Below the pieces are notes generated by a model that worked only from the letters and a program-made list of their open reading frames with translations, made no database searches and was not told where the DNA came from. From positions 1-64,000 of the IMG/VR virus record IMGVR_UViG_3300044701_000569: DNA of 64,000 nucleotides. The stretch is one strand, 5' to 3'. The position numbers and the translations under genes were made by a program. Below are positions 4,683 through 17,755 of the stretch, piece by piece (the stretch's first letter is position 1; each line of letters begins with the position of its first letter).

Positions 4683-4694
4683 TACCTTAACCTA

Positions 4695-5219
4695 TTAAAA
4701 ATAATGTGCTACTGCCTGAGTCGCACAAAGATCTAAAGCCTTTCGCCATTGCGCACGACCAGTGTATTCAAAAATTATACTAGGTTCTGGGTCACATGTC
4801 AACCAAGTTTCTTCTTTTATTTCATCTTCTAACTGTCCAGGCATCCAACCACTAAGTCCAACACATAATCTCCAAAAATCAGGAGAATTACCATCTGCTA
4901 ACTTTTGTATCATTACTATATCAGAAGTGATAGCTAGTCCACCTGGGACCTGCATAGTATTTGATCCATACCATTCGTCTGAGTGCAACATTATTAGTGC
5001 GCCTGGATTAACAGGTCCGCCTGTATAAACATCTATGTTAGGCTGTAGAGAACCGTGTTCTTTGAGAAGGACATCTGCTTTGTGTCCTGATGTTTTATTA
5101 AGTATTAGACCAGCTACGCCTTTACTACTGTTTTCAGTAACTAAGATTACTGAGTTTGCGAATAGAGATCGCTTTGGTAAATTTGGATGTGCTATCAGCA
5201 GTTTTCCTGCTTTGACCAT
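4695..5219 (-). CDS. YqgE/AlgH (DUF179) family protein
   Basis: LLIAHP, F..SVIL, GLILNK, GGPV, G.SGW.PGQLE.EI...W. Confidence 0.85.
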   Translation of the reverse strand: MVKAGKLLIAHPNLPKRSLFANSVILVTENSSKGVAGLILNKTSGHKADVLLKEHGSLQPNIDVYTGGPVNPGALIMLHSDEWYGSNTMQVPGGLAITSDIVMIQKLADGNSPDFWRLCVGLSGWMPGQLEDEIKEETWLTCDPEPSIIFEYTGRAQWRKALDLCATQAVAHYF

Positions 5220-5224
5220 TTTGT

Positions 5225-5485
5225 TTAACTCCAATCTGGTAGAGGTCCACCATACTTTTTGCCTTTGATCTTCTTACCGCCAACTTTAGCACGACTGTCT
5301 TTGGTAACGCCCAGCTTATGGCTCTTGTTGCCTTCTCTGCGGCGATACCCTTGACTCTTACAGGAAGCCAACGCACTTGCACCTAATGCTGAGTTAGGTT
5401 TAGAACTTTTGCAGAGACTGCGAGTTGCCTGCCAATCTCTTAGACGTATGTCATCTTCTTCGGTAATAAAGTCAAGGGCTTTCAT
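5225..5485 (-). CDS. Small basic hypothetical protein
   Basis: MKALDFITE start, TAAATA upstream on minus strand. Confidence 0.6.
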   Translation of the reverse strand: MKALDFITEEDDIRLRDWQATRSLCKSSKPNSALGASALASCKSQGYRRREGNKSHKLGVTKDSRAKVGGKKIKGKKYGGPLPDWS

Positions 5486-5500
5486 ACAGTTATTTAGCAC

Positions 5501-5716
5501 CTATCTGTAACGGTCAGCAGGATTTTCAAATTCTCTGCTTTCTTCACACAATCTAAATGTTAGTACTTTACGTGGACCGCGAGTTGTATTAATAGATATT
5601 TCTCCTGTCTTTTCGTGGAATTCAATCTTGGTAATTTTAGCCTTGTCGCCATTAGGGCCAACAAGAATCTCTTGACCCAACTCTAAGTGTAGGTCAATTC
5701 CGCGTAATGTACTCAT
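5501..5716 (-). CDS. Hypothetical protein
   Basis: AGGAG SD; ORF track. Confidence 0.7.
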   Translation of the reverse strand: MSTLRGIDLHLELGQEILVGPNGDKAKITKIEFHEKTGEISINTTRGPRKVLTFRLCEESREFENPADRYR

Positions 5717-5822
5717 GGGATTCTCCTAAGAATTCTAAGTATAGAAAAGCAGTTGCTACTGCTTCAAATATTTATTCTGCTGATAATTTTTAATATAAAT
5801 TAGTATATAGGAGAAACATATA

Positions 5823-6107
5823 ATGCAAATTGAAGATATTACAACAGGCGAAAGTTGGGGTTGCAAGTTTAAGGTTCGCACATTTGTTGATGAACAAGGA
5901 CAGCCTGTAAATACTAAAAATATTCCGCTTGGTGGCAAGGTGCCCGGAAATCCTGGTTGGTATGAAAGTGTTGGGTCAATAGCACTGCGTGACTCTAAGA
6001 ATAAGTTAGTAGAAATTATTGATCATCAGTTACCTGACCGTAAGTGGACAGTTAGTTGGGCAGACTGTTGGGACATTGACAGGGTAGAATACGCTGAAGA
6101 TAAGTAA
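5823..6107 (+). CDS. Hypothetical protein
   Basis: AGGAG SD. Confidence 0.7.
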   Translation: MQIEDITTGESWGCKFKVRTFVDEQGQPVNTKNIPLGGKVPGNPGWYESVGSIALRDSKNKLVEIIDHQLPDRKWTVSWADCWDIDRVEYAEDK

Positions 6108-6138
6108 GTGTGCATGAACACAACAAGGAATATGCGCA

Positions 6139-6456
6139 ATGGCACACGAAGATGATGAGCTAGAAGCTGCTGCAAAAGTAGCATTAGGTGAAGCACTTAA
6201 CCTAGCTGCTCAGATTGCAGAAATGCAAATGAATGAAGAAGCCAGAGTTGATATCTACCAATTGTTAGATACCGTAGCGGAATACTACGGTGTTGAACGA
6301 ACAGAAGTTATTATCGATGACGATGAAGACGGGACTGTTATCGTTCGTTACACACGTGATGATGATGACGAAGATGACACAGACGATGCTAAGAAGGATA
6401 ACGAACTGCCCAGCTACCTAACACTGGCTGTGGACAACGATAAAAAGCTACATTAG
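6139..6456 (+). CDS. Acidic hypothetical protein
   Basis: AAGGA SD; D/E-rich. Confidence 0.65.
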   Translation: MAHEDDELEAAAKVALGEALNLAAQIAEMQMNEEARVDIYQLLDTVAEYYGVERTEVIIDDDEDGTVIVRYTRDDDDEDDTDDAKKDNELPSYLTLAVDNDKKLH

Positions 6457-6476
6457 CAATAACGGAGGGCACGGGC

Positions 6477-6671
6477 ATGAGGGTAGACAGTATACAATCT
6501 GTCGATCACATCACACCTAATCAGCGTGTGTTGGAACGAGTATTTTATGGCACAGATGAACGCACTGGCGTTAAAGTGCAACAAAGTTACTACTATGTGA
6601 TAGAAGTCTATAATGAAAAGGGTAAAGTAGAAGAGTCACAAAAGGGCAGAAACGTAGATCTAAGAGCATAA
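6477..6671 (+). CDS. Hypothetical protein with GAGGGCA-type leader
   Basis: Leader GGAGGGCACGGGCATG. Confidence 0.6.
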   Translation: MRVDSIQSVDHITPNQRVLERVFYGTDERTGVKVQQSYYYVIEVYNEKGKVEESQKGRNVDLRA

Positions 6672-6679
6672 TTATTATT

Positions 6680-7186
6680 ATGCAAAACTTTAACTTCGTC
6701 AAACACACTCTAGACCCTGATTGGCAGGATGCCATAGAATATGCCCTTACAGGCGGCAGTCAATTTCCTTGGCAGTTCTGTCAACAAAAAACAACAGACG
6801 CTGAAATACTACCTTGGAACAGTCAATTTACGCATGAGTTCTATGCAGATGGAGAAGTGCAAACACCATTCTTTGAAATAATAGAGCCTGTTCTAGAAGT
6901 GTTAGATCCGCTGAGTTTAATTCGTGTTAAGGCCAATCTTACTATCGCTACACAGGATAGAATGAATCACGATTGGCACAAAGATTCCGGTGACAGCCGT
7001 TTACAGGCAGCAATCTACTATGTTAATACTAATAATGGATCAACAGAGTTTATAAGTGGTGATATGATAGAATCTGTTAAAGGACAGCTAATAACTTTTC
7101 CTGCAGATATGGAGCATAGAGTTTGGACCCACACTGATGTGCAGGCCCGAGCTGTAGTTAGCTTTCTTTATCTAGCTAAAGTTTAA
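6680..7186 (+). CDS. 2OG-Fe(II) oxygenase-like protein
   Basis: FPWQ, RVKANLT, WHKD, YYVNTNNGST, MEHR; resembles 28102-28611. Confidence 0.75.
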   Translation: MQNFNFVKHTLDPDWQDAIEYALTGGSQFPWQFCQQKTTDAEILPWNSQFTHEFYADGEVQTPFFEIIEPVLEVLDPLSLIRVKANLTIATQDRMNHDWHKDSGDSRLQAAIYYVNTNNGSTEFISGDMIESVKGQLITFPADMEHRVWTHTDVQARAVVSFLYLAKV

Positions 7187-7521
7187 CGACAAATCCTACG
7201 TTCACGCATGACGCCGTAGTAGCGATCATATTCACGTACCCAAGTGCATTCACGCACAATCACACGTTCACGATAGATAACTTCAGGCTGTGGGTGTCTC
7301 TGTGCTTGCTGTTGATCCATGCTCTGACCCACGTTAGATCCAATAACTGAACCTACTACGGCTCCGGCGGCTGACCCTGCGGGGCCTGCTCCCAGGGCTC
7401 GTCCTACAGCATAGCCTGTGACGCCGCCAGCCACAGTGCCTACACCTTGATTAGGTCCTGAGGCACAACCTGTTAATACTAGGGCACTCAGTGCCACTGC
7501 ACCCATTACACTCTTGCGCAT
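7183..7521 (-). CDS. Glycine-zipper lipoprotein
   Basis: Lipobox LTGC; GxxxG repeats. Confidence 0.8.
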   Translation of the reverse strand: MRKSVMGAVALSALVLTGCASGPNQGVGTVAGGVTGYAVGRALGAGPAGSAAGAVVGSVIGSNVGQSMDQQQAQRHPQPEVIYRERVIVRECTWVREYDRYYGVMRERRICR

Positions 7522-7555
7522 ACCGTTTCTCCTCTGTTGCTGTTATATGTGCAGT

Positions 7556-8113
7556 TTATTTATAGAACGCATGCTGGCCCAACTGCACAGTGGGTCGCTT
7601 GGTCTCTGCCCAGGCTGGTGCTGATTCCATCCAAGTAGCGTGATAGAACACAGCGCCACGAGTAGGGTCTTTCTGCATCTCTCCACGTTCACGCTTGCCC
7701 ATAACTTCCCACGCTATCTGTTTTGCTCGATGCCATGCTACAGGATCTCGAGGCTCGTCTGGTTTGCCATCACAGAACCAACTAAACTGGCACAGATTGC
7801 GTAGAGGACGTCCCTGCGTGTCAGTCTTGGCCTGAGCCACTACAGCACACACTGAGTTAGGATAGTGAGGATGATCAACCCTGTTCAGGGTGACCCAAGC
7901 CACTGCTCGCTGTCCTCGCTCACTTTCTGAACGTGCTTCCCAGTACACATTGCGAGCTAGACACTCTAACTCACGAGCACGTTCCAGCTCTGCTACTCTA
8001 GTGTCTAATCGCTCTACAGTTCGGTGATCTTGCCAAAGATGTGCCAGTAGCAGTGAGCCCACAACAACACCGCCTGCAAGCCTGCGAGCAGTTCTACCAA
8101 ATCGCACTATCAT
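7556..8113 (-). CDS. Cell wall hydrolase, SleB/Hydrolase_2 family
   Basis: CLARNVYWEARSE, AVAWVTLNRV, CQFSWFCDGK, DPTRGAVFYHA, GQHAFY. Confidence 0.9.
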   Translation of the reverse strand: MIVRFGRTARRLAGGVVVGSLLLAHLWQDHRTVERLDTRVAELERARELECLARNVYWEARSESERGQRAVAWVTLNRVDHPHYPNSVCAVVAQAKTDTQGRPLRNLCQFSWFCDGKPDEPRDPVAWHRAKQIAWEVMGKRERGEMQKDPTRGAVFYHATWMESAPAWAETKRPTVQLGQHAFYK

Positions 8114-8412
8114 CGAGGCCTCACTGTTCTGCCCACAACTTCACCATAACAGTTGGTAGCAATGATTTCTACTACGTTATAATGATAGATGGGTGTGTAA
8201 CCACAGATTCTATTGGGATCACGTCGCCCTGCTGAGCTGCCATAACCGTAGGGTCCATGAACTCTGGGCGATTCAGGTATACGCCCACGAAACAGTTCGT
8301 TGAGCACTACACCGCCCGCAATAGCACCTACAACCTGCTGATCTATGCTTTGTGCAGAAGCACCAAAACTTACTAGGGCTGTAAGACCCGCTCCAATTAC
8401 AAATTTACGCAC
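8110..8412 (-). CDS. Hypothetical secreted protein
   Basis: Signal peptide; AGGAG SD; TTGACA-17-TATATT promoter upstream (8447-8475). Confidence 0.65.
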   Translation of the reverse strand: MRKFVIGAGLTALVSFGASAQSIDQQVVGAIAGGVVLNELFRGRIPESPRVHGPYGYGSSAGRRDPNRICGYTPIYHYNVVEIIATNCYGEVVGRTVRPR

Positions 8413-8477
8413 AGAAGTACTCCTTCAGTGAATTAACATACTAGTTAATATAACACTGAAGGCAGAGTCTGTCAACC

Positions 8478-9389
8478 TTACTGTTCAACTTCAAAAAGCT
8501 GTGGATCCAAATCTGCGTCCACAGTTTCGGGTGTGAACCTATTGTTTGGATCATAGAGGTCTGTGCGTTCTGCAGGTATCATGAAACGATCCATCATCTT
8601 CTTAGCATAGTTCCATTCTGGAGGCATAACTCTGCCATCTGCTAGTGTGATCACATAGTTGCGAGTATTGAAGTAGTCCATGAGTTCCTGTATGGTCTGT
8701 CCAAATGCTCTGGGCTGTATTTCCACGCACTCAATCTGCACTATGGGTCTGTTGGACTGTATGGTATTGATTGCGCCACGCAGTACTTCCAATTCATAGC
8801 CTTCAACATCAATCTTAATAATGTCTACGTCTGTAAACCCAAAACTGTCCAGGGTGTGCTGTGGAACAGTGACTCGCTGATAGCCTGTGTTCACCTTAAC
8901 TGGACGACCATTCAATTTAGTGTAATTGTCATTGGCTACCCGGTTGTGTCCGTCGTTCTTTTTGATGTGCATCTCTATCGTGCCCGGGCCAGGTCCCAGT
9001 GCTAGATTGTAGGTGTGTATCTGTGCGCTGGGCAGTAGATCCGCCCATGTGCCATCCTCTAGTCTGTACCAACCACGTGTGGGATCTGAGTGGCTTCTGT
9101 TCAACCCAATATTGTCCACAGCAGTGTCATAGGTAGCGGGCACGGGTTCAAAGCCATGCACTTCTTGTGCCCAGGTAGCGTACTCCCAGGTGTTCATGCC
9201 TATGTTCATGCCTATGTCCAAGATCTTGCGTGGCTGAGGCACTAGGTCGCGCAGTCGTATTAGATTCTGCTTTTGATAGGGTCCTGCTCGCAGACGCTGT
9301 GTGTAGAATGAGTCTGAATCCCACACCCACATCTGACGTCCGATGTTGTTGGTTATGAGTATCTTTTGTGTTTGTGCCTGTACTGTCAT
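8478..9389 (-). CDS. FkbM-family SAM-dependent methyltransferase
   Basis: LDIGMNIG, VHGFEP, IKIDVEGYELEVLRGA. Confidence 0.85.
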   Translation of the reverse strand: MTVQAQTQKILITNNIGRQMWVWDSDSFYTQRLRAGPYQKQNLIRLRDLVPQPRKILDIGMNIGMNTWEYATWAQEVHGFEPVPATYDTAVDNIGLNRSHSDPTRGWYRLEDGTWADLLPSAQIHTYNLALGPGPGTIEMHIKKNDGHNRVANDNYTKLNGRPVKVNTGYQRVTVPQHTLDSFGFTDVDIIKIDVEGYELEVLRGAINTIQSNRPIVQIECVEIQPRAFGQTIQELMDYFNTRNYVITLADGRVMPPEWNYAKKMMDRFMIPAERTDLYDPNNRFTPETVDADLDPQLFEVEQ

Positions 9390-9447
9390 AGTTTCTCCTT
9401 GATATCGTACTTATGGTCTGCGCAGACTGCACCTGCGAAAAATGGCC

Positions 9448-10143
9448 TTAGAAAGGGTATCTGTCATAGTCTGTGATCACTGATGAGGGCAGTTCGTTGA
9501 TGGGGAACTTTGAGCCAAAGCGTCCCAGACGTGTTTCCTGCCAGCTCTGTTCGTGTGTTTCCAATTGGCTCTTGTTGAGATCATAGTTGATCACAAAGGC
9601 AAATCTGCTGTCTCTGCAGAGAGGATCGCCCAAGAGCTGATCTCGCAGACTCTTGTGACGTCGCCACCCGCCCGTGAGCTGAATGTTGCAGCTTTCATGC
9701 CGTCCCAGAACCTTGAGTGTGTGCTTCCAGATCCTGCTCAGTGTGCCGCAGCCAAAGGGATCCGTGCCGTTCTTTGAGCTCATACGCCCACTGGTGGCAA
9801 TGCCCAGATAGCCCGAGCCCTGCCAGGGTTCATGGAATGCGTCTGCGTAGATGTAGAGTCCGCCAAAACAGTCCTCTTTGAGCTGTATCAGACTCTCCAG
9901 AGGATTGGGTCGACTGTGTGAAAAACCCAAGCCTAGATCTCTGTACACACGATCGCGCTTTTCATACCACTGGGGCACAGGTCCCAAAAACCTCAGCCTC
10001 AGCCCCCCATCTGGCAGTTTAACATTCCTAGGATCAGGTTCGCCCGACTCTAGCAGTAGCTGTCGAGAGCGGGGATCTACGCAGCTATAGACTTCAAATA
10101 TGTCGTGAATGCTGTAGTAGGGAGTCCAATTGTATTGTGCCAT
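9448..10143 (-). CDS. Hypothetical protein (possibly GIY-YIG-like)
   Basis: GLYIY...GYLGIA...RIWKH; TTGACA-17-TATAGT promoter upstream (10176-10204). Confidence 0.5.
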   Translation of the reverse strand: MAQYNWTPYYSIHDIFEVYSCVDPRSRQLLLESGEPDPRNVKLPDGGLRLRFLGPVPQWYEKRDRVYRDLGLGFSHSRPNPLESLIQLKEDCFGGLYIYADAFHEPWQGSGYLGIATSGRMSSKNGTDPFGCGTLSRIWKHTLKVLGRHESCNIQLTGGWRRHKSLRDQLLGDPLCRDSRFAFVINYDLNKSQLETHEQSWQETRLGRFGSKFPINELPSSVITDYDRYPF

Positions 10144-10369
10144 CTGTGAGACCTTGAGAGTTGTTATAAAATACTACTATAACATCTAGCACAGAGGTTG
10201 TCAAGCTCAAACTAGGCACACAGCACAGGCACACAGTGCCAATAACAGCACACAGAGATAGATCACACCGCACCCCACGCTATGATGATTACAGCTAGGC
10301 CAATTATTATCAAACTGGCTAATTCCACGGGTGTAAACACAGAGACCTCCATAAAACTAGTATATAGTC

Positions 10370-10567
10370 CTAGACTATCCAATCTCGACGAGGTGTTCGT
10401 TCTATGTGGGGATCAAACGCATATAATAAGTAACCCCATTGCTCTGGAACTGAAAACTCTGTCCAAAGAGGAGTTACACTCATCCAACCTCCTAGGCGCT
10501 GTACAAAGGCTGCAATTGGATCCTGATCCTCTACGGGTAGTCGACTGCGATAGGTTTGATAGAGCAT
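10370..10567 (-). CDS. Small hypothetical protein
   Basis: ORF track. Confidence 0.45.
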   Translation of the reverse strand: MLYQTYRSRLPVEDQDPIAAFVQRLGGWMSVTPLWTEFSVPEQWGYLLYAFDPHIERTPRRDWIV

Positions 10568-10586
10568 ACACTAGTATATAGCAGAC

Positions 10587-10788
10587 TAGGCCCCGCTGCT
10601 GCCCACGAGTGTGTGAGTCTAGAGCTGCAGAGCAGTCCAAAAAAATTTTGGAGCAGGGACAGCAGAATGAGCACTCTACACAGAGAAGAGCCTGCACAGT
10701 GTAGTGAGCACACAGCGCCTATAGGCCCCGCTGCTAGATCAGGGGTCTAGACACAGAACAGAGCATAGGCCCCGCTGCTAGGCCCCGC
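10587..10788 (+). repeat. Dispersed 14-bp direct repeat TAGGCCCCGCTGCT
   Basis: Exact copies at 10587-10600, 10722-10735, 10766-10779; partial copy at 10779-10788. Confidence 0.9.
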
Positions 10789-10801
10789 CATAAATATCTA
10801 C

Positions 10802-10987
10802 ATGGAGTACACACTGGTAACTGAGCGCAGAGAGGGCACTGCACACTACACTCTGATAGACACTGAGAGGGACAGCATCATAGTGACTACTAGCTATAAA
10901 CCCTTGATAGATTGGATAGTTGCACGTAGTCTTAGACAGATCCAACCCGCAGAGCCTAGGCACACTACGGGTAAGAGAAGACTGTAA
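10802..10987 (+). CDS. Small hypothetical protein
   Basis: TAAATA at 10791-10796 just upstream of ATG. Confidence 0.5.
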   Translation: MEYTLVTERREGTAHYTLIDTERDSIIVTTSYKPLIDWIVARSLRQIQPAEPRHTTGKRRL

Positions 10988-10990
10988 GTG

Positions 10991-11038
10991 AGTGAGAGAA
11001 AATGGTAAAAGTATAGTGAGAGAAAATGGTAAAAGTAT
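10991..11038 (+). repeat. 24-bp tandem duplication AGTGAGAGAAAATGGTAAAAGTAT
   Basis: 10991-11014 and 11015-11038 identical. Confidence 0.9.
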
Positions 11039-11333
11039 TTGAACTATGTCTCTCGGCACCACGAGCCTCCTCAGAATTTTTACACAGTAGAACCTATGGT
11101 GTGACCACTATAACCTACGGTTTCTTCACGGCCCACCACCATTTAACACCCCTTGCATAGCTATAAAACACCTCTACAATGGTGGTGGGAGAGTGATTCT
11201 GTGGAGAATTTTTTATTCTTTTTAGAATTCTCACTCTCCCTCATGCTGCTGTCTACACTACAGTATTAGAGAGGGAGATCTAGATCTATACGCTAGTAGA
11301 GATCAAGGTCTAGAGCACTACAGTAGTACTGGA

Positions 11334-11372
11334 ATACCAAAGTAAATTTTAGACCTATACCAAAGTAAATTT
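11334..11372 (+). repeat. AT-rich 16-bp direct repeat ATACCAAAGTAAATTT x2
   Basis: 11334-11349 and 11357-11372. Confidence 0.85.
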
Positions 11373-11425
11373 CTGTCAACAACCTGGGGCGAGGATCCAA
11401 AAGATTCTAGGAAAAACACTCGACC

Positions 11426-11530
11426 TGTGGATAAGTCTGTGGATCGAGTTATGCACAGGCTGTTGTGGATAACTCAGCTGTGGATAACTTTGGTGTTGCG
11501 AAAATGCCACTGTGGATAAGCTGTGGATAA
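11426..11530. promoter_or_regulatory. Cluster of DnaA boxes
   Basis: TGTGGATAA (reverse complement of TTATCCACA) at 11426, 11464, 11479, 11511, 11522; TTATGCACA at 11449; degenerate TGTGGATCG at 11438. Confidence 0.85.
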
Positions 11531-11541
11531 CTCTGGGAGTG

Positions 11542-11613
11542 TAACCTGTTGATTCTAAAGACGTTTTTCACCCGTTCTTTCGATTTAAAAACTCTATATA
11601 AATCAATGACTTA
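11542..11613. promoter_or_regulatory. Two IHF consensus sites (WATCAANNNNTTR)
   Basis: 11542-11554 minus strand AATCAACAGGTTA; 11601-11613 plus strand AATCAATGACTTA. Confidence 0.7.
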
Positions 11614-11718
11614 GCGGCGAGACCTCAGCTAGAACATGAAGTCTTTCAGCTGCGGCGAATGGTTGACATTTGGGTGCTGTCGTGTATAATAGAGACTTAG
11701 TTAGACAATTGAGGAGCC

Positions 11719-11880
11719 ATGATGCCTAAATTTTATTACACACAGACTGTGACATATACCTTACAGGTTGACGCAGACACAGCAGAAGCAGCAGACGAGA
11801 TTGCTGGAATGACCGATGTAAACTCTGCGGGAGTTAATGCCACCTACGAGGGCTGGGAAGAAGACGGTTACGCAGAATAA
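11719..11880 (+). CDS. Small acidic early protein (53 aa, not in ORF track)
   Basis: GAGGAG SD, own promoter; MMPKFYYTQTVTYTLQVDADTAEAADE...GYAE. Confidence 0.7.
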   Translation: MMPKFYYTQTVTYTLQVDADTAEAADEIAGMTDVNSAGVNATYEGWEEDGYAE

Positions 11881-11943
11881 TTTGGTTGACATTTGGGTGC
11901 TGTCGTGTATAATACTAGTATGTTCAACGGAGAGGGCACTAAA

Positions 11944-12186
11944 ATGGACTATGACATCGAGTTTATTAATACTACCGACTCAACTGTAGACTATAGCGAG
12001 CGAGCTATAGCAGAGTTCGAGAGGGGCATGGGGGATCGTATTGAGGTGTATACAGAGCAGTTCGAAAGCGACTGCGGGTTAGAACTGTGCGACGCAGACG
12101 ACATCGGCGGGCTCATTGTATACAGTGCAGAGGGAGCTCTGCGAGCAGTATACGACTATGAGAACTTCTGCGGGTGGCTCGTTTAA
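11944..12186 (+). CDS. Acidic early hypothetical protein
   Basis: Own promoter, GAGGGCA leader. Confidence 0.75.
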   Translation: MDYDIEFINTTDSTVDYSERAIAEFERGMGDRIEVYTEQFESDCGLELCDADDIGGLIVYSAEGALRAVYDYENFCGWLV

Positions 12187-12287
12187 ACGGGTGCAGAGGG
12201 GTGTGGCATAATAGCCACACTCTTTTTGGTTGACACGGTGCCAGAATCGTGTATAATAAGAACATAGGGCAACAGAAAGAGGGTGTT

Positions 12288-12545
12288 ATGGCAAAGACTT
12301 ATCGTTTCGTAGGGGTAAGCAACCTTAACGGTCGCTGGGCTGTTCGCTATGCCAACGAGCGGACTCGTGCGCGGGTTCTGCAGAAGAACGGGCATACGGA
12401 CGTGAAGCTGTGGGATTTGAAGGAAGCTCTGCGAGCAGAAGACCTCGTGGACGAGCTGCTCAACAAGGTTGGGCGTGGTGAGATTCTGGGCTCTGCTCGT
12501 GAAGCTGTCCTGGACGAAGCTCGCAGAATCGGCTTTGCGGTCTAA
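12288..12545 (+). CDS. Early hypothetical protein, paralog of 13475-13765
   Basis: Shared G.S.LNG....R(Y/F)AN....VL..NGHT.(V/I)KL pattern. Confidence 0.75.
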   Translation: MAKTYRFVGVSNLNGRWAVRYANERTRARVLQKNGHTDVKLWDLKEALRAEDLVDELLNKVGRGEILGSAREAVLDEARRIGFAV

Positions 12546-12616
12546 AAAAGAGGTTGACATTTGGGATCTTGGTGCTATACTAAGAGCATAGGGCAAACGA
12601 ACTGAGAGGGCAAACG

Positions 12617-13342
12617 ATGTTCAAACTGTTATCAACAGCGAATCCAAAAATCCAAAAAGGTACCAAGGAAGGCTATCTCAGCTTCATCCTGCACCTTGCT
12701 CCTGCTGATTTGAGCGGGCGTGAAGTCTGCGCCAAGCGGACCGCGGGTTGCACGGCAGCATGTCTCAACACCGCAGGGCGTGGTGGCATGTTCCGCAAGG
12801 GCGAGAACACCAACGTTATTCAAAAGGCACGTATTCGCAAGACCAAGTACTTCTTTGAGAATCGTGAAGCTTTCATGAGCGATCTTGTAGAAGACATCAT
12901 GCGAGCTGTGAACTATGCACGCCGCAAGGGCTTGACTCCCGTGTTTCGTTTGAATGGTACTAGTGACCTTGCTTGGGAGAAGTACCCAGTTCCCAACATG
13001 GGCAAGAACATCTTTGACACGTTCAGCACTCTTCAGTTCTACGACTACACCAAGATCCTGGGCCGTAAGACGAAGGATATTGACAATTACCACTTGACAT
13101 TCTCAGCCGCGGACGGTAACGACGCAGATGTTGAGCGGGCTGTGGCTCAGGGCATGAATGTCGCTGTGGTGTTTGATCGTCTGCCCGAGAATTATATGGG
13201 CAAGACTGTATTCAACGCAGACGATACGGATCTGCGCTTTTTGGATCCTAAGGGCGTGGTGCTTGGACTCAAAGCCAAGGGCCGTGCTAAGAAGGACACT
13301 TCGGGCTTCGTGCGCCGAGTGATTCCCCTGAGTGTTGCATAA
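12617..13342 (+). CDS. GP88-like phage protein (Cys-rich, CxxxxxxCxxxC)
   Basis: LHLAPA, CAKRTAGCTAACLNTAGRG, RLNGTSD, FYDYTK, NYHLTFS, DLRFLD, GLKAKG. Confidence 0.7.
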   Translation: MFKLLSTANPKIQKGTKEGYLSFILHLAPADLSGREVCAKRTAGCTAACLNTAGRGGMFRKGENTNVIQKARIRKTKYFFENREAFMSDLVEDIMRAVNYARRKGLTPVFRLNGTSDLAWEKYPVPNMGKNIFDTFSTLQFYDYTKILGRKTKDIDNYHLTFSAADGNDADVERAVAQGMNVAVVFDRLPENYMGKTVFNADDTDLRFLDPKGVVLGLKAKGRAKKDTSGFVRRVIPLSVA

Positions 13343-13474
13343 GTGCCACACTTTGGGGGTGGGCAATGGTGCCCAAAATATATGGTTGACACAATCCAAA
13401 AACCATGTATAATTTGAATATGAGCTGCGGGAACAGGTTCCAAAGCCATAAACTATGCACAAGGAGCATAAGAA

Positions 13475-13765
13475 ATGTCTAAGACGTTTACAATCGCTGG
13501 TACTTCCAGCCTCAATGGTAAGGTGAAGTTTCGTTTCGCTAACGGCACGATCAAGCATCGTGAGCAGGTGTTGACCCGCAACGGTCACACCGGGATCAAG
13601 CTCTATGAGCTGCCCTCTGCTATGGACAAGGACGCTGCTCGCTCCTTTGTCGAGAGCCAGGCTATCATGGCTCCCACTGTAACGGCTGAGGCTGTAGTGG
13701 CTGCAAAGCCCGCTCGAGCTCCAAAGGTCACAGTGCCTGCGGACGCAGAAGACGCTCTCATGTAA
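13475..13765 (+). CDS. Early hypothetical protein, paralog of 12288-12545
   Basis: AAGGAG SD; shared motifs. Confidence 0.75.
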   Translation: MSKTFTIAGTSSLNGKVKFRFANGTIKHREQVLTRNGHTGIKLYELPSAMDKDAARSFVESQAIMAPTVTAEAVVAAKPARAPKVTVPADAEDALM

Positions 13766-13885
13766 AGAGCAGTGGGGTGTGGCAGCAATGCCACACTCTT
13801 TTATAATGGCATCTTTTGGTTGACAATCTGCCCAAAGGTGCTATTATATAAGAGTGTTCAACAAACCATTGAGAGGGCAATCCAT

Positions 13886-14362
13886 ATGGAAACCGTTACA
13901 CTGCGGGGCGAAGACTTTCGTACAATCCACAACACGCTCTGCGAGCTGCGCGGCCTTGTAGAACGCATGACCCATTCGATCGTTAAGATCGATGACGTGC
14001 AGGACATCATCACCAAGTTCGAGTACGGGCTGAAGGACGCCTACGATCAGGACAGTTCAGCCTTTGATCGCAAGATGGACCACTACAGTGCTGTCAAAGA
14101 AGCAGAAAGCTTTCGCACAGTATGGAGCATCTTCACAGTGGAAGACCTGTACGAAGAGCATCCCTACAAGGACGCAGACACCATTGTCTACGAGAACCAC
14201 TGGGGCACCAGTCCCATCCGTGTAAGCTTCAAGGGCCGTCGTTGGGTAGATCTGTATGCTGCTGCGAACGCTGCGATCTGCACTTCGGGCGATGCTCATC
14301 ACATCTTTATCGAGCAGTTTACCCCCTTTGGGCGCGATCTAGTGCTGCAAACGGGCAGCTAA
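13886..14362 (+). CDS. Early hypothetical protein
   Basis: Promoter plus GAGGGCA leader; C-terminal GDAHHIFIEQF. Confidence 0.75.
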   Translation: METVTLRGEDFRTIHNTLCELRGLVERMTHSIVKIDDVQDIITKFEYGLKDAYDQDSSAFDRKMDHYSAVKEAESFRTVWSIFTVEDLYEEHPYKDADTIVYENHWGTSPIRVSFKGRRWVDLYAAANAAICTSGDAHHIFIEQFTPFGRDLVLQTGS

Positions 14363-14454
14363 GTCGTTGATCTAGAACAGGAATCTTTTTGGTTGACAAA
14401 TGGATTCCTGATGCTATAATAAGAACATAGGGTAAACAGAAAGAGGGTAATCAA

Positions 14455-14697
14455 ATGTCAAAAGTAGAACTTCGCAGCTTCGAAATCACTCCTGCAGAGC
14501 GTCGCCTCGCTGAGATCGGGCGCGGCATGATGGATGCTGCTGTGACCTGCAAGGACGATGCAGAGAGCAATCATCTTGCAGAGTGCGGTCACAAGCTCTG
14601 CGCTTTCAATGCGCCATATGGCACCACAATCAAGGACTTCACCGCTGAAGACAATGCGCTGATCCGTAAGTTCCTGGAGGGTGGTTATGCTTCTTAA
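14455..14697 (+). CDS. Early hypothetical protein
   Basis: Promoter plus AGGGTA leader. Confidence 0.75.
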   Translation: MSKVELRSFEITPAERRLAEIGRGMMDAAVTCKDDAESNHLAECGHKLCAFNAPYGTTIKDFTAEDNALIRKFLEGGYAS

Positions 14698-14899
14698 GTA
14701 TTGTGACTTCATCGCAGATCGTGTGCGAAAAGGACTCGTGAACTCGATGAACGACAGTCTAGAGCCTGTGCGTCTCAAGGACGTGGGCTCTGTAAAATGG
14801 GATTTGGGTCCGCAGGGTGAGTTTCGCTCAACCGCTAAGAGTCTTTTGGTTGAGGACGCCTACGGATCCAAATATAAGATCACGATTGAAGAAATTTAA
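14687..14899 (+). CDS. Early hypothetical protein
   Basis: GGAGG SD; overlaps the upstream stop. Confidence 0.6.
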   Translation: MLLKYCDFIADRVRKGLVNSMNDSLEPVRLKDVGSVKWDLGPQGEFRSTAKSLLVEDAYGSKYKITIEEI

Positions 14900-14998
14900 T
14901 CTTAGGGGTTGACAACCCCTAACTGTGGCCTTATAATAAGACATACTGAGGGAATAGGTATTCCCGAAGGTACTTCTACAATAAAAGGAAAAGGCATA

Positions 14999-15280
14999 AT
15001 GAAGCGATTTAATCCAGAAACCAAGACCTTCAAGGTCTTCAATGCACTCTACAACGGTGACAAGCTCACAGCGGCTCAGGCTGCAAAGCGTTTTGGCGTT
15101 GGCAATCTTGCTGCTGAAGCAAGCCGCATCCGCCAGTCAGGCTATGCTGTCTATGCTAACCAGCGTACCGCAGGCAACGGTGTAACCGTTACTGAGTATG
15201 AGATGGGTCAGCCCAGCCGCGAGATCGTTGCTCTCGGCTACAAGGCCAAGGCAGCAGGTCTTACCCTAGACACCATCTAA
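14999..15280 (+). CDS. Winged helix-turn-helix DNA-binding protein (putative)
   Basis: LTAAQAAKRFGVGNLAAEASRIRQSGYAVY followed by beta-hairpin-like YEMG. Confidence 0.65.
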   Translation: MKRFNPETKTFKVFNALYNGDKLTAAQAAKRFGVGNLAAEASRIRQSGYAVYANQRTAGNGVTVTEYEMGQPSREIVALGYKAKAAGLTLDTI

Positions 15281-15397
15281 GGTGCTCAAGAGTGTGGCAG
15301 AAATGCCACACTCTTATATAATAGCATCATTTATGGTTGACAAGCGCCTAGATGATGCTATTATATAAGAGTGTTCAACAAAGACAGAGGGCAAACA

Positions 15398-15688
15398 ATG
15401 TCAAATCGTGTTACAAGGGCAGTAGAACAGATCTACCAAATGGACGCCAACGAACTGAATCAAGTCGTTGAAGCAATCAAACTCAAACGCACCAGCCTAG
15501 CCCGTCAGGCTACTCGCTCCGTGATCATCGGCGATACTGTGAGCTTCGAAGCTCGCGGACGCATGGTTGTGGGCAAGGTCACCAAGGTGAACATCAAGAC
15601 GCTCACAGTTCGTGAAGACCGCAATGGTTCAGTCACCAACTGGAAGGTGTCCGCTACACTCGTCAACAAAGTAACCGTAGGAGCCTAA
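15398..15688 (+). CDS. Early hypothetical protein (SH3-like C-terminus)
   Basis: IGDTVSF...GKVTKVN.KT..V...WKV. Confidence 0.7.
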   Translation: MSNRVTRAVEQIYQMDANELNQVVEAIKLKRTSLARQATRSVIIGDTVSFEARGRMVVGKVTKVNIKTLTVREDRNGSVTNWKVSATLVNKVTVGA

Positions 15689-15689
15689 T

Positions 15690-16256
15690 ATGCCTAATTG
15701 GTGCAATAATTCCGTTACCATCACTCACACTGACACTGCCAAGATGCAGGCCCTTGTGGCCGCTGTCAACGAAGGCAAGTTCTGCGATCATGTGATTCCT
15801 ACTCCGCAGGATCTCACTGACACTGTGTCAGGATCCGTGCCTGAGGGGCCTGAGCGTGAAGCTCATGAAGCTCAGATGAAGCGTAACCTAGAGCTCTACG
15901 GAGCCAAGGACTGGTATGACTATCAGGTTTCCAACTGGGGGACCAAGTGGGATGTTCAGCCCTACGACACTGTTGAGCTGGAAGACGGCACTGTCTCCTT
16001 TGGCTTTGACAGTGCTTGGAGCCCGCCCATTGGAGTCTACACCATGCTGGTTGAACAAGGGTTCACTGTCAAGGCTTTCTACTACGAGCCAGGCATGTGC
16101 TTTGCTGGTGTATGGGAAGACGGCATTGATGAGTTCTACGAGCTGGACGGTATGTCTTCTGATGAAGTAGCCAACACGATCGATCGCGAGTTGGACGAGG
16201 TCATGGGCATCTCAGAGAGCATGGCTGAATACGAAGAAGAAAACATCGAAGAATAA
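15690..16256 (+). CDS. DUF1281/YubB ferredoxin-like domain protein
   Basis: MPNWCNN, WYDY...NWGTKWD, FDSAWSPP, YYEPG..FAG. Confidence 0.75.
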   Translation: MPNWCNNSVTITHTDTAKMQALVAAVNEGKFCDHVIPTPQDLTDTVSGSVPEGPEREAHEAQMKRNLELYGAKDWYDYQVSNWGTKWDVQPYDTVELEDGTVSFGFDSAWSPPIGVYTMLVEQGFTVKAFYYEPGMCFAGVWEDGIDEFYELDGMSSDEVANTIDRELDEVMGISESMAEYEEENIEE

Positions 16257-16314
16257 TGGTTGACAGCACCCTACGGGGTGCTATAATGAGCATATGAACA
16301 GCAAAGAGGGTATC

Positions 16315-16527
16315 ATGTCAAAAGAGATCTTGTTTGAAGACCTTGCAGAACAGCTGGCGCTGCTCAGCGACGAGGATCGTGCAGAGTTTGCTCAGTTCCT
16401 TGTAGAGAACTATCTACACGCCGCAGCGGGCTTGGCTACAGACATTGGACACGCTGAGATGGATCTAGAGTATTCTGCTCACGACACTTTTGAAGCGTAT
16501 CAAAGACGCGAGAACATATTCACATAA
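16315..16527 (+). CDS. Early acidic hypothetical protein
   Basis: Promoter plus GAGGGTA leader. Confidence 0.7.
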   Translation: MSKEILFEDLAEQLALLSDEDRAEFAQFLVENYLHAAAGLATDIGHAEMDLEYSAHDTFEAYQRRENIFT

Positions 16528-16544
16528 AGAGTAAATAACATCAC

Positions 16545-16621
16545 GCTCCTATAGCTCAATTGGTTAGAGCACCGGACTCATAATCCGTAGGTTCACAGTT
16601 CAAGTCTGTGTGGGAGCACCA
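16545..16621 (+). tRNA. tRNA with CAT anticodon, probably Ile2 (lysidine, reads AUA); elongator Met not excluded
   Basis: Acceptor GCTCCTA/TGGGAGC, anticodon loop CTCATAA, GTTCAA T-loop, encoded CCA; C4-G69 and C5-G68 pairs as in TilS substrates. Confidence 0.85.
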
Positions 16622-16624
16622 AAT

Positions 16625-16707
16625 GTCCGCGTGGTGGAATAGGTAGACACAAGAGACTTAAAATCTCTCGCTTAGGCGTGCCGGTTCGAGTCCGGCCGCG
16701 GATACCA
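16625..16707 (+). tRNA. tRNA-Leu(TAA)
   Basis: Acceptor GTCCGCG/CGCGGAT, AGAGA-CTTAAAA-TCTCT, long variable arm, CCA. Confidence 0.92.
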
Positions 16708-16785
16708 AGGCTAAGTATATGAACAAGACCAGTCAAGGTTATAAGAAGTATATACAAAAGATGAACTATCAACAGTTTATCAAAT

Positions 16786-16863
16786 CTGCCCGTAGCTCAG
16801 CAGGATTAGAGCAACAGCCTTCTAAGCTGTGGGTCGGGGGTTCGAATCCCTCCGGGCAGGCCA
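16786..16863 (+). tRNA. tRNA-Arg(TCT)
   Basis: Acceptor CTGCCCG/CGGGCAG, ACAGC-CTTCTAA-GCTGT, GGTTCGAATCC, CCA. Confidence 0.92.
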
Positions 16864-16890
16864 TTACCCCCAAAGCCAAACAGTAATACC

Positions 16891-17070
16891 ATGCCTCGCA
16901 TACCAACTAGTCGGATTCCTGACGACTGGGACTCCTACGACGATGATGAGCTAGATCTTAACCTAGAAGAGGAACGGGAGCGCAGAGAGCGCAAACGAAC
17001 CAAGCAAGACGCTGATGAGGACCAACAGCGCAGGGATTCGTGGCGCAAAAGCAACACCAAACGCAGCTAA
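16891..17070 (+). CDS. Small charged hypothetical protein (59 aa, not in ORF track)
   Basis: MPRIPTSRIPDDWDSYDDDE...NTKRS. Confidence 0.45.
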   Translation: MPRIPTSRIPDDWDSYDDDELDLNLEEERERRERKRTKQDADEDQQRRDSWRKSNTKRS

Positions 17071-17161
17071 GTCATTGATTCTAATAGAGAATCTTTTTGG
17101 TTGACAAGATCCCGTGTTCGTGTATAATAAGAACATAGGGCAAACAAACAAAGAGGGCAAT

Positions 17162-17440
17162 ATGATAGAACGCAAAGACTACACCGTAGAGGTTTACAAG
17201 GCAGACAAGCGCACCAAAGCAGGTGAGCGCCTTGTGCTCAAGCAGGATCACACAGACATCGATCTGCAGACACTGCGTCATCTTTATCTTACCACTTGGT
17301 TCAAGAACGACGGCTACCGCCATGAGTTCCACGAGACTTATGTAACCCGCACCAACATGATGGGTGGTAAGGAGTATCAGGAACGCTATGACACTCCTCG
17401 CTACTGCTCACCCAGCTCTGAAGCCTACTGGAGCATGTGA
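17162..17440 (+). CDS. Early hypothetical protein
   Basis: Promoter plus double AGGGCA leader; C-terminal TPRYCSPSSEAYWSM. Confidence 0.8.
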   Translation: MIERKDYTVEVYKADKRTKAGERLVLKQDHTDIDLQTLRHLYLTTWFKNDGYRHEFHETYVTRTNMMGGKEYQERYDTPRYCSPSSEAYWSM

Positions 17441-17441
17441 T

Positions 17442-17669
17442 TTGAGGACTGATGACATCCTACAATGGACAGGGGCGGTGTTCATCATCGCTGGACACGC
17501 CCTCAACGCCGTGGGCCCGGGTGCCCACCCGTGGAATATCCTGGCTTTCTTCCTGGGTACTATAGCATTCTTTATCTGGACTGTCCGTGTTGCAAATAAG
17601 CCGCAGATGGCTGTGAATGTGGTAGCCCTAGGGCTAGGAGCACTGGGTCTAGTAAAATCAATGACTTAA
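17442..17669 (+). CDS. Small membrane protein (about 3 TM)
   Basis: Hydrophobic; start uncertain (TTG). Confidence 0.55.
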   Translation: MRTDDILQWTGAVFIIAGHALNAVGPGAHPWNILAFFLGTIAFFIWTVRVANKPQMAVNVVALGLGALGLVKSMT

Positions 17670-17755
17670 CAGACCAAAAAAGTTTCAAAAAAGTGGTTGA
17701 CATTTGGGCGCACCCGTGTATAATAAGAACATAGGGCAAACAGAAAGGGCATACA

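What the first reader, a model, noticed from the sequence alone, without database searches (positions are those of the whole stretch)
11334..11613. oriC/datA-like element in a phage: six DnaA boxes plus two IHF sites and AT-rich repeats at the entry to the early island
Seen: five perfect TGTGGATAA (11426, 11464, 11479, 11511, 11522), one TTATGCACA (11449) and one degenerate box within 105 bp of non-coding DNA. They are followed by two perfect WATCAANNNNTTR sites (11542 minus, 11601 plus) and preceded by ATACCAAAGTAAATTT x2. Established: DnaA boxes plus IHF is the architecture of bacterial oriC and of E. coli datA, where it promotes DnaA-ATP inactivation; DnaA-box-like repeats are also reported near the T5 injection-stop signal. 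The phage encodes its own helicase, primase, SSB and recombination proteins. Inference: either a host-DnaA-dependent origin for first-round replication, a decoy that titrates or inactivates DnaA to halt host replication, or a DNA-entry signal.
Basis: partly seen in the sequence, partly recalled or inferred. Interest (0 to 1): 0.8.

Follow-up and report, generated by a model that had tools for sequence, protein, structure and literature searches.

The report
Host DnaA-box array in jumbo phage
An uncultivated giant phage carries, just upstream of its first early promoter, a tight array of perfect binding sites for the host replication initiator DnaA; the array resembles the little-understood DnaA-box pairs of phage T5 more than a bacterial origin, and similar arrays occur in many unrelated phages.

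Summary
Five perfect TGTGGATAA boxes, one TTATGCACA and one 7/9 box lie within 105 bp (11426-11530). The whole 64-kb window has six perfect boxes against 0.7 expected. Two pairs have the 2-3 bp spacing that E. coli DnaA needs to bind in vivo.

The window is the first 64 kb of a 357-kb IMG/VR jumbo myovirus contig, distantly PA5oct-like. The array sits in a 1.45-kb untranslated, repeat-dense region, 133 nt upstream of the first of about 22 near-consensus sigma-70 promoters.

The oriC/datA reading is not supported. One "IHF site" is a 13-nt motif repeated four times upstream of early promoters. The other, the AT-rich 16-mers and the DnaA-trio-like pattern are not conserved in relatives, and no IHF site lies between boxes.

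A relative keeps the syntenic array (7 boxes, plus a 3-box cluster), but another lacks it. Only 9 of 80 related loci carry arrays, scattered on the tree.

Similar arrays occur in at least 120 viral contigs, in T5-like terminal repeats, and in T7-like and SP6-like (Molineuxvirinae) podophages.

Best reading: a T5-iss-type accessory element that captures DnaA and acts in cis on the early region. An origin or a decoy remain possible.

The parts
11426..11434 (+). DnaA box 1, perfect TGTGGATAA. It is the first half of a double box with a 3-bp 'gtc' spacer.
11438..11446 (+). Degenerate DnaA box TGTGGATCG (7/9), second half of the 3-bp-spaced double box
11449..11457 (-). Consensus-class DnaA box (TTATGCACA on the + strand), the only box in the opposite orientation
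11464..11472 (+). DnaA box, perfect
11479..11487 (+). DnaA box, perfect (15 nt start-to-start from the previous box)
11511..11530 (+). Perfect double DnaA box TGTGGATAAgcTGTGGATAA (2-bp spacer, 11-bp period). With its next base (C, 11531) it forms the exact 21-mer found in at least 120 viral contigs.
11334..11372 (+). Two copies of the AT-rich 16-mer ATACCAAAGTAAATTT (11334-11349 and 11357-11372). Not conserved in the relative L112.
11376..11387 (+). TCAACAACCTGG, identical to 12 nt in E. coli MG1655 oriC downstream of R1; from memory, that stretch is the IHF site (IBS1). Partly conserved in L112 (CAACCAGG). A possible IHF-type site or a chance match.
11542..11554 (-). Match to the IHF consensus (AATCAACAGGTTA). 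The consensus is not kept in the homologous block of relatives.
11575..11614 (.). Least stable duplex stretch of the intergenic region (about the 99th percentile of the window), between the array and the first early promoter
11601..11613 (+). AATCAATGACTTA, one of four identical copies, each upstream of an early promoter. A promoter-associated motif also present in relatives L122, L188 and L059.
11663..11690 (+). First early promoter (TTGACA-16-TATAAT, 12/12), heading a block of about 22 near-consensus sigma-70 promoters on the + strand that runs to 23.3 kb
10176..10204 (-). Leftward promoter-like site (11/12) for gene 9448-10143. It marks the left edge of the 1.45-kb untranslated region.
10991..11060 (+). 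24-nt tandem repeat x2 (10991-11038) running into the block GGTAAAAGTATTTGAACTATGYCTCTCG, which is conserved across relatives. It anchors synteny of the non-coding region.
11132..11189 (.). Inverted repeat CCCACCACCATT / AATGGTGGTGGG (34-nt loop). The core CCACCATT/AATGGTGG is kept in L112.

Best explanation
The element is a genuine array of high-affinity binding sites for the host replication initiator DnaA, maintained by selection. It was added to the long untranslated, repeat-dense control region that heads the phage's early gene block, which is transcribed by host RNA polymerase.

Proposed sequence of events:
1. As soon as this DNA is in the cell, DnaA occupies the two double boxes (2-bp and 3-bp spacing) and the neighbouring boxes.
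2. DnaA forms a head-to-tail oligomer that points in the direction of early transcription.
3. The complex acts in cis on the first events on the incoming genome. It could hold or organise the first-entered DNA, as proposed for the T5 injection-stop region. It could also act as a boundary or regulator for the first early promoter, 133 nt downstream.

It is an accessory module of the same kind as the DnaA-box pairs of the T5 first-step-transfer untranslated region. It is not a copy of oriC or datA and not the family's essential origin.

Shown: the sites, their spacing, their position, and their conservation and loss among relatives. Inferred: DnaA occupancy, with high confidence (about 0.85). 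Inferred with much less certainty: the cis function.
For: Strength of the sites:
- 5 perfect and 2 near-consensus boxes lie in 105 bp; the window has 6 perfect boxes against 0.7 expected.
- The only two double boxes with 2-3 bp spacing in the 64 kb are both here. E. coli DnaA binds such pairs preferentially in vivo (PMC11317965).

Position:
- The array is non-coding and lies 133 nt upstream of the first of about 22 near-perfect sigma-70 promoters, all on the + strand.

Relatives:
- L112/L102/L023/L123 keep a 7-box, same-orientation array at the syntenic place although the flanks have diverged.
- They also have a second 3-box cluster 19 nt upstream of a -35.
- L188, L165, L125 and L194 have arrays too.
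- In loci oriented by the AAA+ gene, 27 boxes point with early transcription and 3 against.

T5:
- The T5 iss region, read directly, has TGGGGATAAgtcTGTTGATAA ... TGTTGATAAgtcTGTGGATAA.
- T5 has a further box cluster between divergent pre-early promoters.
- Davison reports 8 boxes in pairs in 25 T5-like phages, with the replication origins mapped elsewhere (10.1101/866236).

Other phages:
- Similar arrays lie in terminal repeats or leading regions of T5-like coliphages and Vibrio phages, the T7-like Shigella phage A7, the Molineuxvirinae (SP6-like) Klebsiella phage ZK1 and Microbacterium phages.
- From general knowledge, T7-type replication does not use DnaA.

Origin features (conserved DUE, IHF, trios) are absent.
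Against: - No experiment in any phage shows what DnaA-box arrays do. The T5 model is itself a hypothesis.
- The physical ends and direction of entry of this genome are unknown. The contig has no terminal repeat, and the T4-type terminase may mean headful packaging, in which case there is no fixed entry point.
- Distances from arrays to the next -35 vary from 19 to about 213 nt, so there is no fixed activator or repressor geometry.
- Early intergenic spacers all contain promoters, so proximity to one is partly unavoidable.
- The region also holds iteron-like repeats and an easily melted stretch, which would fit an origin.
Confidence: 0.45

Rival explanations
1. The array is a host-DnaA-dependent replication origin, or an auxiliary DnaA-loading part of one. 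DnaA would oligomerise on the phased boxes and help melt an adjacent AT-rich stretch. The surrounding iteron-like repeats would bind a phage initiator, as in P1 oriR, F oriS or RK2 oriV.
For: - Same-orientation boxes are phased at 11, 22 and 33 nt.
- An easily melted stretch lies 45 nt to the right, and AT-rich 16-mers lie 54 nt to the left.
- TAG GAA AAA triplets sit 8 nt left of box 1 and fit the permissive BUS pattern (read from the sequence).
- A 12-mer is identical to a stretch of E. coli oriC downstream of R1, recalled as its IHF site.
- The region is dense in repeats (CACTAC, CCACCATT).
- It is a divergent intergenic region at a local cumulative GC-skew minimum.
- Some DnaA arrays in other viral contigs sit beside ERF or primase-helicase genes.
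Against: - The relative L121/L122 keeps the same non-coding region and promoter but has no DnaA box.
- 71 of 80 related loci lack arrays, and carriers are scattered on the AAA+ tree.
- Relatives carry two arrays a few kb apart.
- The AT-rich elements, the IHF match and the trio-like triplets are not conserved.
- The GC-skew switch coincides with the switch in gene strand.
- The replication genes lie at least 20 kb away, and the phage has its own DnaB-like helicase, a UvsW-like helicase and a RecA-like protein.
- In T5 the origins map elsewhere.
Confidence: 0.25
2. The array acts in trans on the host. It would be a DnaA sink, or a datA- or DARS-like catalytic site that lowers or deregulates DnaA-ATP and so perturbs host replication initiation or DnaA-controlled genes.
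For: - The double boxes are perfect and high-affinity.
- Some relatives carry several arrays per genome, so the site number multiplies with phage replication.
- The patchy, repeatedly gained distribution fits an accessory host-manipulation trait.
- L112's 3-box cluster has two boxes in one orientation and one in the other, as recalled for the DARS core (the DARS layout is from memory only).
Against: - One entering genome offers about 7 sites, few next to the hundreds of chromosomal boxes (general knowledge). The effect would therefore come only late in infection, unless the site is catalytic.
- datA activity needs an IHF site between boxes 2 and 3 with set spacings (PMC4585315), and none exists here.
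- The consistent placement at early regions or genome ends, and the orientation bias across phages, are not needed for a sink.
Confidence: 0.15
3. The repeats are bound by a phage-encoded protein, not by DnaA, or they are a non-functional tandem duplication.
For: - The repeat unit is a little longer than the 9-mer (CTGTGGATAAC).
- The region is full of other lineage-specific repeats.
Against: - The core is the exact universal DnaA consensus in every copy.
- The same consensus recurs in at least 41 unrelated clusters of viral contigs and in several cultured phage families.
- The extended flank equals that of E. coli R1/R4.
- No DnaA-domain-IV-like protein was found among 44 ORFs between 2 and 31 kb.
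- Box sequence is conserved between the window and L112 while the flanks diverge.
Confidence: 0.07

Closest known systems
DnaA-box pairs of the phage T5 first-step-transfer untranslated region / injection-stop signal (Heusterspreute 1987; Davison, bioRxiv 10.1101/866236)
   Same: - Virulent phage.
- Boxes in same-orientation pairs separated by 2-3 bp. The window's first pair uses the same 'gtc' spacer as T5.
- The boxes are embedded in a long untranslated, repeat-rich region.
- That region borders small genes driven by strong host-type promoters.
- Boxes are conserved while flanks diverge.
- Function is unknown.
   Different: - The phage is unrelated (jumbo myovirus, T4-type terminase).
- Boxes here are mostly perfect, whereas only about half are consensus in T5-likes.
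- The array is unidirectional, not four pairs set in the IRC/IRD inverted repeats with 52-bp spacers.
- No evidence of a terminal repeat or of two-step entry.
- The array is dispensable within the family.
Escherichia coli oriC (DnaA-oligomerisation region plus DUE plus IHF site)
   Same: - Clustered R1/R4-type boxes with the CTGTGGATAAC flank.
- 2-bp spacing between adjacent boxes, as in the low-affinity arrays.
- A 12-nt identity to the oriC stretch downstream of R1 (recalled as IBS1).
- AT-rich DNA nearby.
   Different: - No two opposed half-arrays.
- The IHF-like elements lie outside the array and are not conserved.
- No conserved 13-mer-type DUE, and no GATC cluster.
- Not flanked by replication genes.
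- Absent from close relatives.
E. coli datA (DnaA-ATP inactivating locus) and DARS1/2
   Same: A non-coding cluster of about 3-6 DnaA boxes acting outside an origin. IHF-consensus matches lie in the vicinity.
   Different: - datA needs an IHF site between boxes 2 and 3 at fixed spacing (PMC4585315). Here no consensus IHF site lies between boxes.
- The DARS core layout was not matched in the window. Only L112's second cluster resembles it, and only loosely.
Iteron-type plasmid and phage origins with auxiliary DnaA boxes (P1 oriR, F oriS, RK2 oriV, pSC101)
   Same: DnaA boxes sit next to several families of short direct repeats and an AT-rich stretch. DnaA boxes are an auxiliary, variable component of such origins (general knowledge).
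   Different: No initiator gene adjoins the region. The iteron-like repeats are not shown to bind anything. Relatives carry multiple DnaA arrays.

Membership tests
Bacterial oriC-type origin | Cluster of DnaA boxes that includes high-affinity consensus sites | tested here: met
   5 perfect and 2 near-consensus boxes in 105 bp
Bacterial oriC-type origin | Adjacent DNA-unwinding element / basal unwinding system (box, spacer of 16 bp or less, at least 3 NAN trios, AT-rich DNA), conserved among relatives | tested here: inconclusive
   TAG GAA AAA lies 8 nt left of box 1, and low-stability DNA lies at 11575-11614. The pattern is permissive (PMC8287927), with roughly a 0.2-0.3 chance of occurring at random. 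It is absent from L112.
Bacterial oriC-type origin | IHF (or other bending-protein) site within the DnaA-oligomerisation region | tested here: not met
   Both consensus matches lie outside the array. One is a promoter-linked 13-mer repeated 4 times, the other is not conserved.
Bacterial oriC-type origin | DnaA-dependent initiation of replication at the site | not testable with these tools
   Needs marker-frequency analysis or an autonomous-replication assay
datA-type DnaA-inactivating locus | IHF site between two essential DnaA boxes at fixed spacing (PMC4585315) | tested here: not met
   No WATCAANNNNTTR match between 11426 and 11530
datA-type DnaA-inactivating locus | Stimulates DnaA-ATP hydrolysis | not testable with these tools
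   Biochemical assay needed
T5 iss-type phage DnaA-box region | DnaA boxes in same-orientation pairs separated by about 3 bp | tested here: met
   Window pairs at 11426/11438 (3 bp, 'gtc') and 11511/11522 (2 bp). T5 pairs read directly.
T5 iss-type phage DnaA-box region | Lies in a large untranslated, repeat-, inverted-repeat- and palindrome-rich region next to early genes transcribed by host polymerase | tested here: met
   1.45-kb ORF-poor gap with 38 direct-repeat families and 31 inverted-repeat pairs found in the 1.85-kb stretch scanned (10100-11950). It is followed by an array of consensus promoters.
T5 iss-type phage DnaA-box region | Pairs embedded in the IRC/IRD inverted repeats with 52-bp spacers, inside a long terminal repeat | tested here: not met
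   The array is unidirectional and no large inverted repeats flank it. The first 40 nt of the contig occur only once in it.
T5 iss-type phage DnaA-box region | Conserved across the phage group | tested here: not met
   Present in about 6 of the phage types sampled and absent from 71 of 80 related loci, including one with the same non-coding region
T5 iss-type phage DnaA-box region | Halts or controls DNA entry | not testable with these tools
   Not demonstrated even for T5
Iteron-type origin with auxiliary DnaA boxes | Iterons bound by a cognate initiator encoded next to them | tested here: inconclusive
   Several repeat families are present. No recognisable initiator was found among the flanking ORFs.

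The most novel reading that the evidence does not exclude
Arrays of consensus DnaA double boxes may be a widespread class of phage cis-element, acquired convergently. They were seen here in at least 41 unrelated clusters of viral contigs, jumbo myoviruses, T5-like phages, T7-like and SP6-like (Molineuxvirinae) podophages, actinophages and microviruses. They are typically placed at the first-expressed or terminal part of the genome and oriented with early transcription. Through them phages would exploit the host initiator at the moment of genome entry, for example as an entry checkpoint, a tether to membrane-associated DnaA, or a sensor of the host's replication state. Replication itself would not be the purpose.
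Probability: 0.25. Interest if true: 0.8.

Novelty: new variant of a known kind. Interest (0 to 1): 0.5.

Why it matters
DnaA is the one DNA-binding protein whose recognition sequence is shared by nearly all bacteria, so a phage can evolve sites for it without knowing its host. DnaA-box pairs have been noted in T5 since 1987 without a demonstrated role.

This window shows a much cleaner version: five perfect boxes with the in-vivo-preferred spacing, in an unrelated jumbo phage. The comparative searches show that similar arrays recur in many phage lineages at early regions and genome ends, and are gained and lost quickly.

If their function were worked out, it would explain an old T5 puzzle. 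It would also reveal a general way in which phages use, or sabotage, the host initiator. If the array turns out to be only an auxiliary origin element, it is a routine feature.

Tried and rejected
- Nucleotide searches of the 1.2-kb region against 50,697 phage records, near and distant, found no match.
- Rfam on 9-13 kb gave only chance-level hits. There are no tRNAs in the gap.
- BLAST of the region against E. coli genomes gave only insignificant short hits. A direct comparison with MG1655 oriC found the DnaA boxes plus one 12-mer identity. This is marginal (score 30 against a shuffle maximum of 29), so capture of a bacterial oriC was rejected.
- A terminal repeat was sought by scanning for the contig's first 40 nt. 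There is a single occurrence, so nothing is learned about physical ends.
- GATC clustering (Dam/SeqA-type origin feature) is not enriched.
- A phage-encoded DnaA-like or IHF-like protein near the array was not found among 44 ORFs. The AAA+ protein at 18655-19761 is phrog_1250, with weak clamp-loader/FtsH-type similarity and no DnaA match.
- Flanking genes of arrays in 41 clusters of viral contigs are heterogeneous phage genes (small terminase, ERF, primase, HTH regulators) with no common partner.
- Arrays lie near contig ends only about twice as often as expected (12 against 6.1). This is too weak to argue for physical termini.
- Literature searches for DnaA boxes with jumbo phages, titration or lytic-phage origins found nothing.

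Full report
**What is in the sequence**

Reading 10900-12100 confirms the boxes:
- TGTGGATAA at 11426, 11464, 11479, 11511 and 11522, all on the + strand.
- TTATGCACA at 11449, in the opposite orientation.
- TGTGGATCG at 11438-11446.

The whole 64-kb window has six perfect boxes against 0.70 expected from shuffles. None of 100 shuffles reaches six. The sixth is a solitary box at 17884, inside an ORF.

With the relaxed consensus TTWTNCACA the window has 15 matches against 9.2 expected, so the excess is entirely the array.

A scan for double boxes (two same-orientation boxes 2 or 3 bp apart, at most 3 mismatches in all) finds exactly two in 64 kb. Both are in the array: 11426 (3-bp spacer 'gtc') and 11511 (2-bp spacer 'gc'). 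E. coli DnaA in vivo binds almost only such pairs spaced 2 or 3 bp (PMC11317965). The sites are therefore as good as DnaA sites get.

**Where it sits**

The window is the first 64 kb of IMG/VR contig IMGVR_UViG_3300044701_000569, which is 357,559 bp long.

It encodes a T4-type large terminase, a tail sheath, a DnaB-like helicase, a UvsW-like helicase and a RecA-like protein. The terminase is 55% identical to that of the Pseudomonas jumbo phage PA5oct group. No cultured phage matches at the nucleotide level.

The array lies in a gap of about 1.45 kb without convincing genes. The gap runs from a leftward promoter-like site (10204-10176) to the first of about 22 perfect or near-perfect sigma-70 promoters. 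These are all on the + strand, between 11663 and 23269, about one per 550 bp, and they drive small genes. The last box ends 133 nt before the first -35.

The gap is dense in repeats:
- a 24-nt tandem duplication;
- a GGCCCCGCTGC motif in four copies;
- two hairpin-forming inverted repeats;
- CACTACAGTA repeats;

**The IHF sites and the oriC/datA picture**

WATCAANNNNTTR occurs 16 times in the window against 4.8 expected. Four of those are the identical 13-mer AATCAATGACTTA (11601+, 17068-, 17656+, 19915+). Each copy lies 20-52 nt upstream of the -35 of an early promoter, at 11663, 17101, 17697 and 19980. The same motif recurs in relatives. It is a promoter-associated operator-like motif, not a partner of the DnaA boxes.

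The other match (11542, minus strand) aligns with CCTGTTCGTTCGG in relatives, which does not fit the consensus.

No IHF match lies between boxes. datA function requires one between boxes 2 and 3 (PMC4585315).

Other origin features are weak or absent:
- GATC sites are not enriched.
- An easily melted 40-nt stretch (11575-11614) and three NAN triplets left of box 1 fit the permissive 'basal unwinding system' pattern (PMC8287927). Neither these, nor the 16-mers, are conserved in the closest array-bearing relative.
- One curiosity remains. TCAACAACCTGG (11376-11387) is identical to 12 nt in MG1655 oriC downstream of R1 (from memory, the IHF site). This is marginally more than shuffles give.

**Relatives**

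Contigs L112, L102, L023 and L123 share the non-coding region. It is anchored by the block GGTAAAAGTATTTGAACTATGYCTCTCG, a CCACCATT/AATGGTGG hairpin, and TAGACCTA and CAACC-GG blocks. At the same place they carry seven perfect boxes, all in one orientation, followed after about 213 nt by a TTGACA-17-TATAAT promoter. The boxes are identical in sequence while the flanks are about 58% identical.

These phages also have a second cluster (two boxes plus one inverted) ending 19 nt upstream of the -35 of the GP88-like gene.

In contrast, L121/L122 (a 236,751-bp contig) have the same conserved block, the repeats and the promoter, but no DnaA box at all.

Among 80 loci that encode a homologue (56-100% identity) of the AAA+ protein at 18655-19761, only nine carry arrays. 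These nine represent about six phage types. On the protein tree they are scattered, and sister taxa with at least 5 kb of upstream sequence lack arrays. The caveat is that this is a single-gene tree and only about 10 kb on either side of the gene was inspected.

In loci oriented by the AAA+ gene, 27 boxes read TGTGGATAA in the direction of early transcription and 3 read the other way.

The array is therefore under selection where present, but it is an accessory, evolutionarily labile module and not a core part of the family's control region.

**Beyond the family**

They fall into 41 megablast clusters, with 2-10 perfect boxes per array.

Spacings of same-orientation neighbours peak at 11, 12, 22 and 33 nt. 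The 11-nt class is partly seeded by the search pattern.

The flanking genes are ordinary phage genes with no common partner and no bacterial dnaA, dnaN or gidA context.

Among cultured phages, 253 records match part of the array:
- T5-like coliphages and Salmonella phages, at about 8.4-9.6 kb inside the terminal repeat.
- T5-like Vibrio phages, at 215-570 nt from the end, with two places per record.
- The T7-like Shigella phage A7: four perfect and about six degenerate boxes within 150 nt of the genome end, two places.
- Klebsiella phage ZK1 (Molineuxvirinae): seven perfect boxes.
- Microbacterium phages, Lactococcus 949-like phages and microviruses.

Representative arrays were read directly.

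T5 itself was also read directly. Its annotated iss shows two same-orientation pairs with a 'gtc' spacer. A further cluster lies between the divergent pre-early promoters. Davison described eight boxes in pairs in 25 T5-like phages. He noted that T5 origins map near the genome centre, and he proposed that membrane-bound DnaA stops DNA entry (10.1101/866236). That model is still untested.

**Interpretation**

DnaA occupancy of the array on entering DNA is a safe inference. What the complex does is not settled by sequence.

I favour a cis-acting role at the head of the early block, of the T5-iss kind (confidence 0.45), for these reasons:
1. The closest precedents are arrays in first-entering or terminal, host-transcribed regions of virulent phages whose origins are elsewhere.
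2. In the six array settings checked (the window family, the two T5 clusters, A7, ZK1 and Squash), the boxes point in the direction of the adjacent genes.
3. The features that would make it an origin are not conserved.
4. The array is dispensable in relatives that keep the surrounding region.

The rivals:
- A DnaA-assisted origin (0.25) remains reasonable, because the region looks iteron-rich and DnaA boxes are variable helpers in plasmid-type origins.
- A trans-acting sink or datA/DARS-like element (0.15) is weakened by stoichiometry and by the missing internal IHF site.
- Binding by something other than DnaA, or no function (0.07), is unlikely given the exact universal consensus and its recurrence.

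**Novelty and score**

DnaA boxes in a phage early untranslated region are known from T5. The open literature searched here holds nothing on jumbo phages or on the breadth seen here.

I class this as a new variant of a known kind, with interest 0.5. It is a clean, testable example and a hint of a general phenomenon, but its function cannot be assigned from sequence.

Noticed in passing
window 11601-11613 (+), 17068-17080 (-), 17656-17668 (+), 19915-19927 (+); also L122, L188, L059: The exact 13-mer AATCAATGACTTA occurs four times, each 20-52 nt upstream of the -35 of a consensus early promoter. At 19915 an inverted copy follows it. It looks like an operator for a conserved regulator. It fits the IHF consensus but is far more invariant than IHF requires.
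   Followed up: partly
window 11663-23296, + strand: About 22 perfect or 11/12 sigma-70 consensus promoters (TTGACA-16-TATAAT) lie roughly every 550 bp. Several share the extended form ggTTGACAtttggg, and there is a 32-nt exact duplicate (11660-11691 = 11883-11914). This is an unusually regular host-polymerase early block. L112 has 17 such promoters in 9 kb.
   Followed up: partly
window 10586-10788; L176, L179, L202, L122: The motif GGCCCCGCTGC is repeated four times in the untranslated region and is conserved in distant relatives. There it often sits about 12 nt upstream of a -35. Its function is unknown.
   Followed up: no
window 10991-11060; L112 200-290; L176 6760-6800; L202 6350-6390; L179 6340-6400: Family-wide repeats with a 10-12-nt period (ATGGTAAAAGTAT / GGTGGAAAAC / GTGTGGAAAA / AAAGTGTGA) lead into the conserved block TATTTGAACTATGYCTC. 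They are iteron-like. In L202 the units happen to match the TTTTCCACA class of DnaA box.
   Followed up: partly
L112 7374-7408 (also L123, L023): A second DnaA cluster (TTATCCACAggTTATCCACAgggggcTGTGGATAA) ends 19 nt upstream of the -35 of the GP88-like gene. The window's homologue (12617-13342) has no boxes at its promoter.
   Followed up: partly
L207 (Shigella phage A7, MK685668 1-150), L208 (Klebsiella phage ZK1, OK625527 1-200), L209 (Microbacterium phage Squash 338-366): Cultured podophages and actinophages carry same-orientation DnaA-box arrays within a few hundred nt of the genome ends, with two places per record in the podophages, consistent with terminal repeats. I found no description of this in the papers searched.
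   Followed up: partly
window 11376-11387: TCAACAACCTGG is identical to 12 nt in E. coli MG1655 oriC downstream of R1 (recalled as its IHF-binding site), and AGGATC follows a few nt later in both. It could be chance (roughly 1 in 100 for the 12-mer) or a convergent IHF-type site.
   Followed up: partly
window 16545-16863: Three tRNA genes (Met-CAT, Leu-TAA, Arg-TCT) lie inside the early block. They are conserved at 84-92% nucleotide identity in L023, L102 and L112.
   Followed up: no
window 19951-20850 (-): The 299-aa minus-strand ORF has no family hit. It is overlapped by three perfect + strand promoters (19980, 20239, 20648), so it is probably spurious and the real genes are small + strand ORFs.
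   Followed up: no
window 1-10200 and 29000-64000: Composition is very uneven, from 0.30 to 0.52 G+C. Metabolic-type genes lie left of the array (class I/II aminotransferase, DUF454, 2OG-Fe(II) oxygenases, FkbM methyltransferase, cell-wall hydrolase). A carbamoyltransferase-like gene sits next to the helicase.
   Followed up: no
PQ006258, PQ007401, MG945484: Microviridae genomes of about 5.6 kb ('bajarodmic virus', pig-faeces Microviridae) give the best-scoring matches to the array, in non-coding DNA. DnaA-box arrays therefore also occur in ssDNA phages.
   Followed up: no
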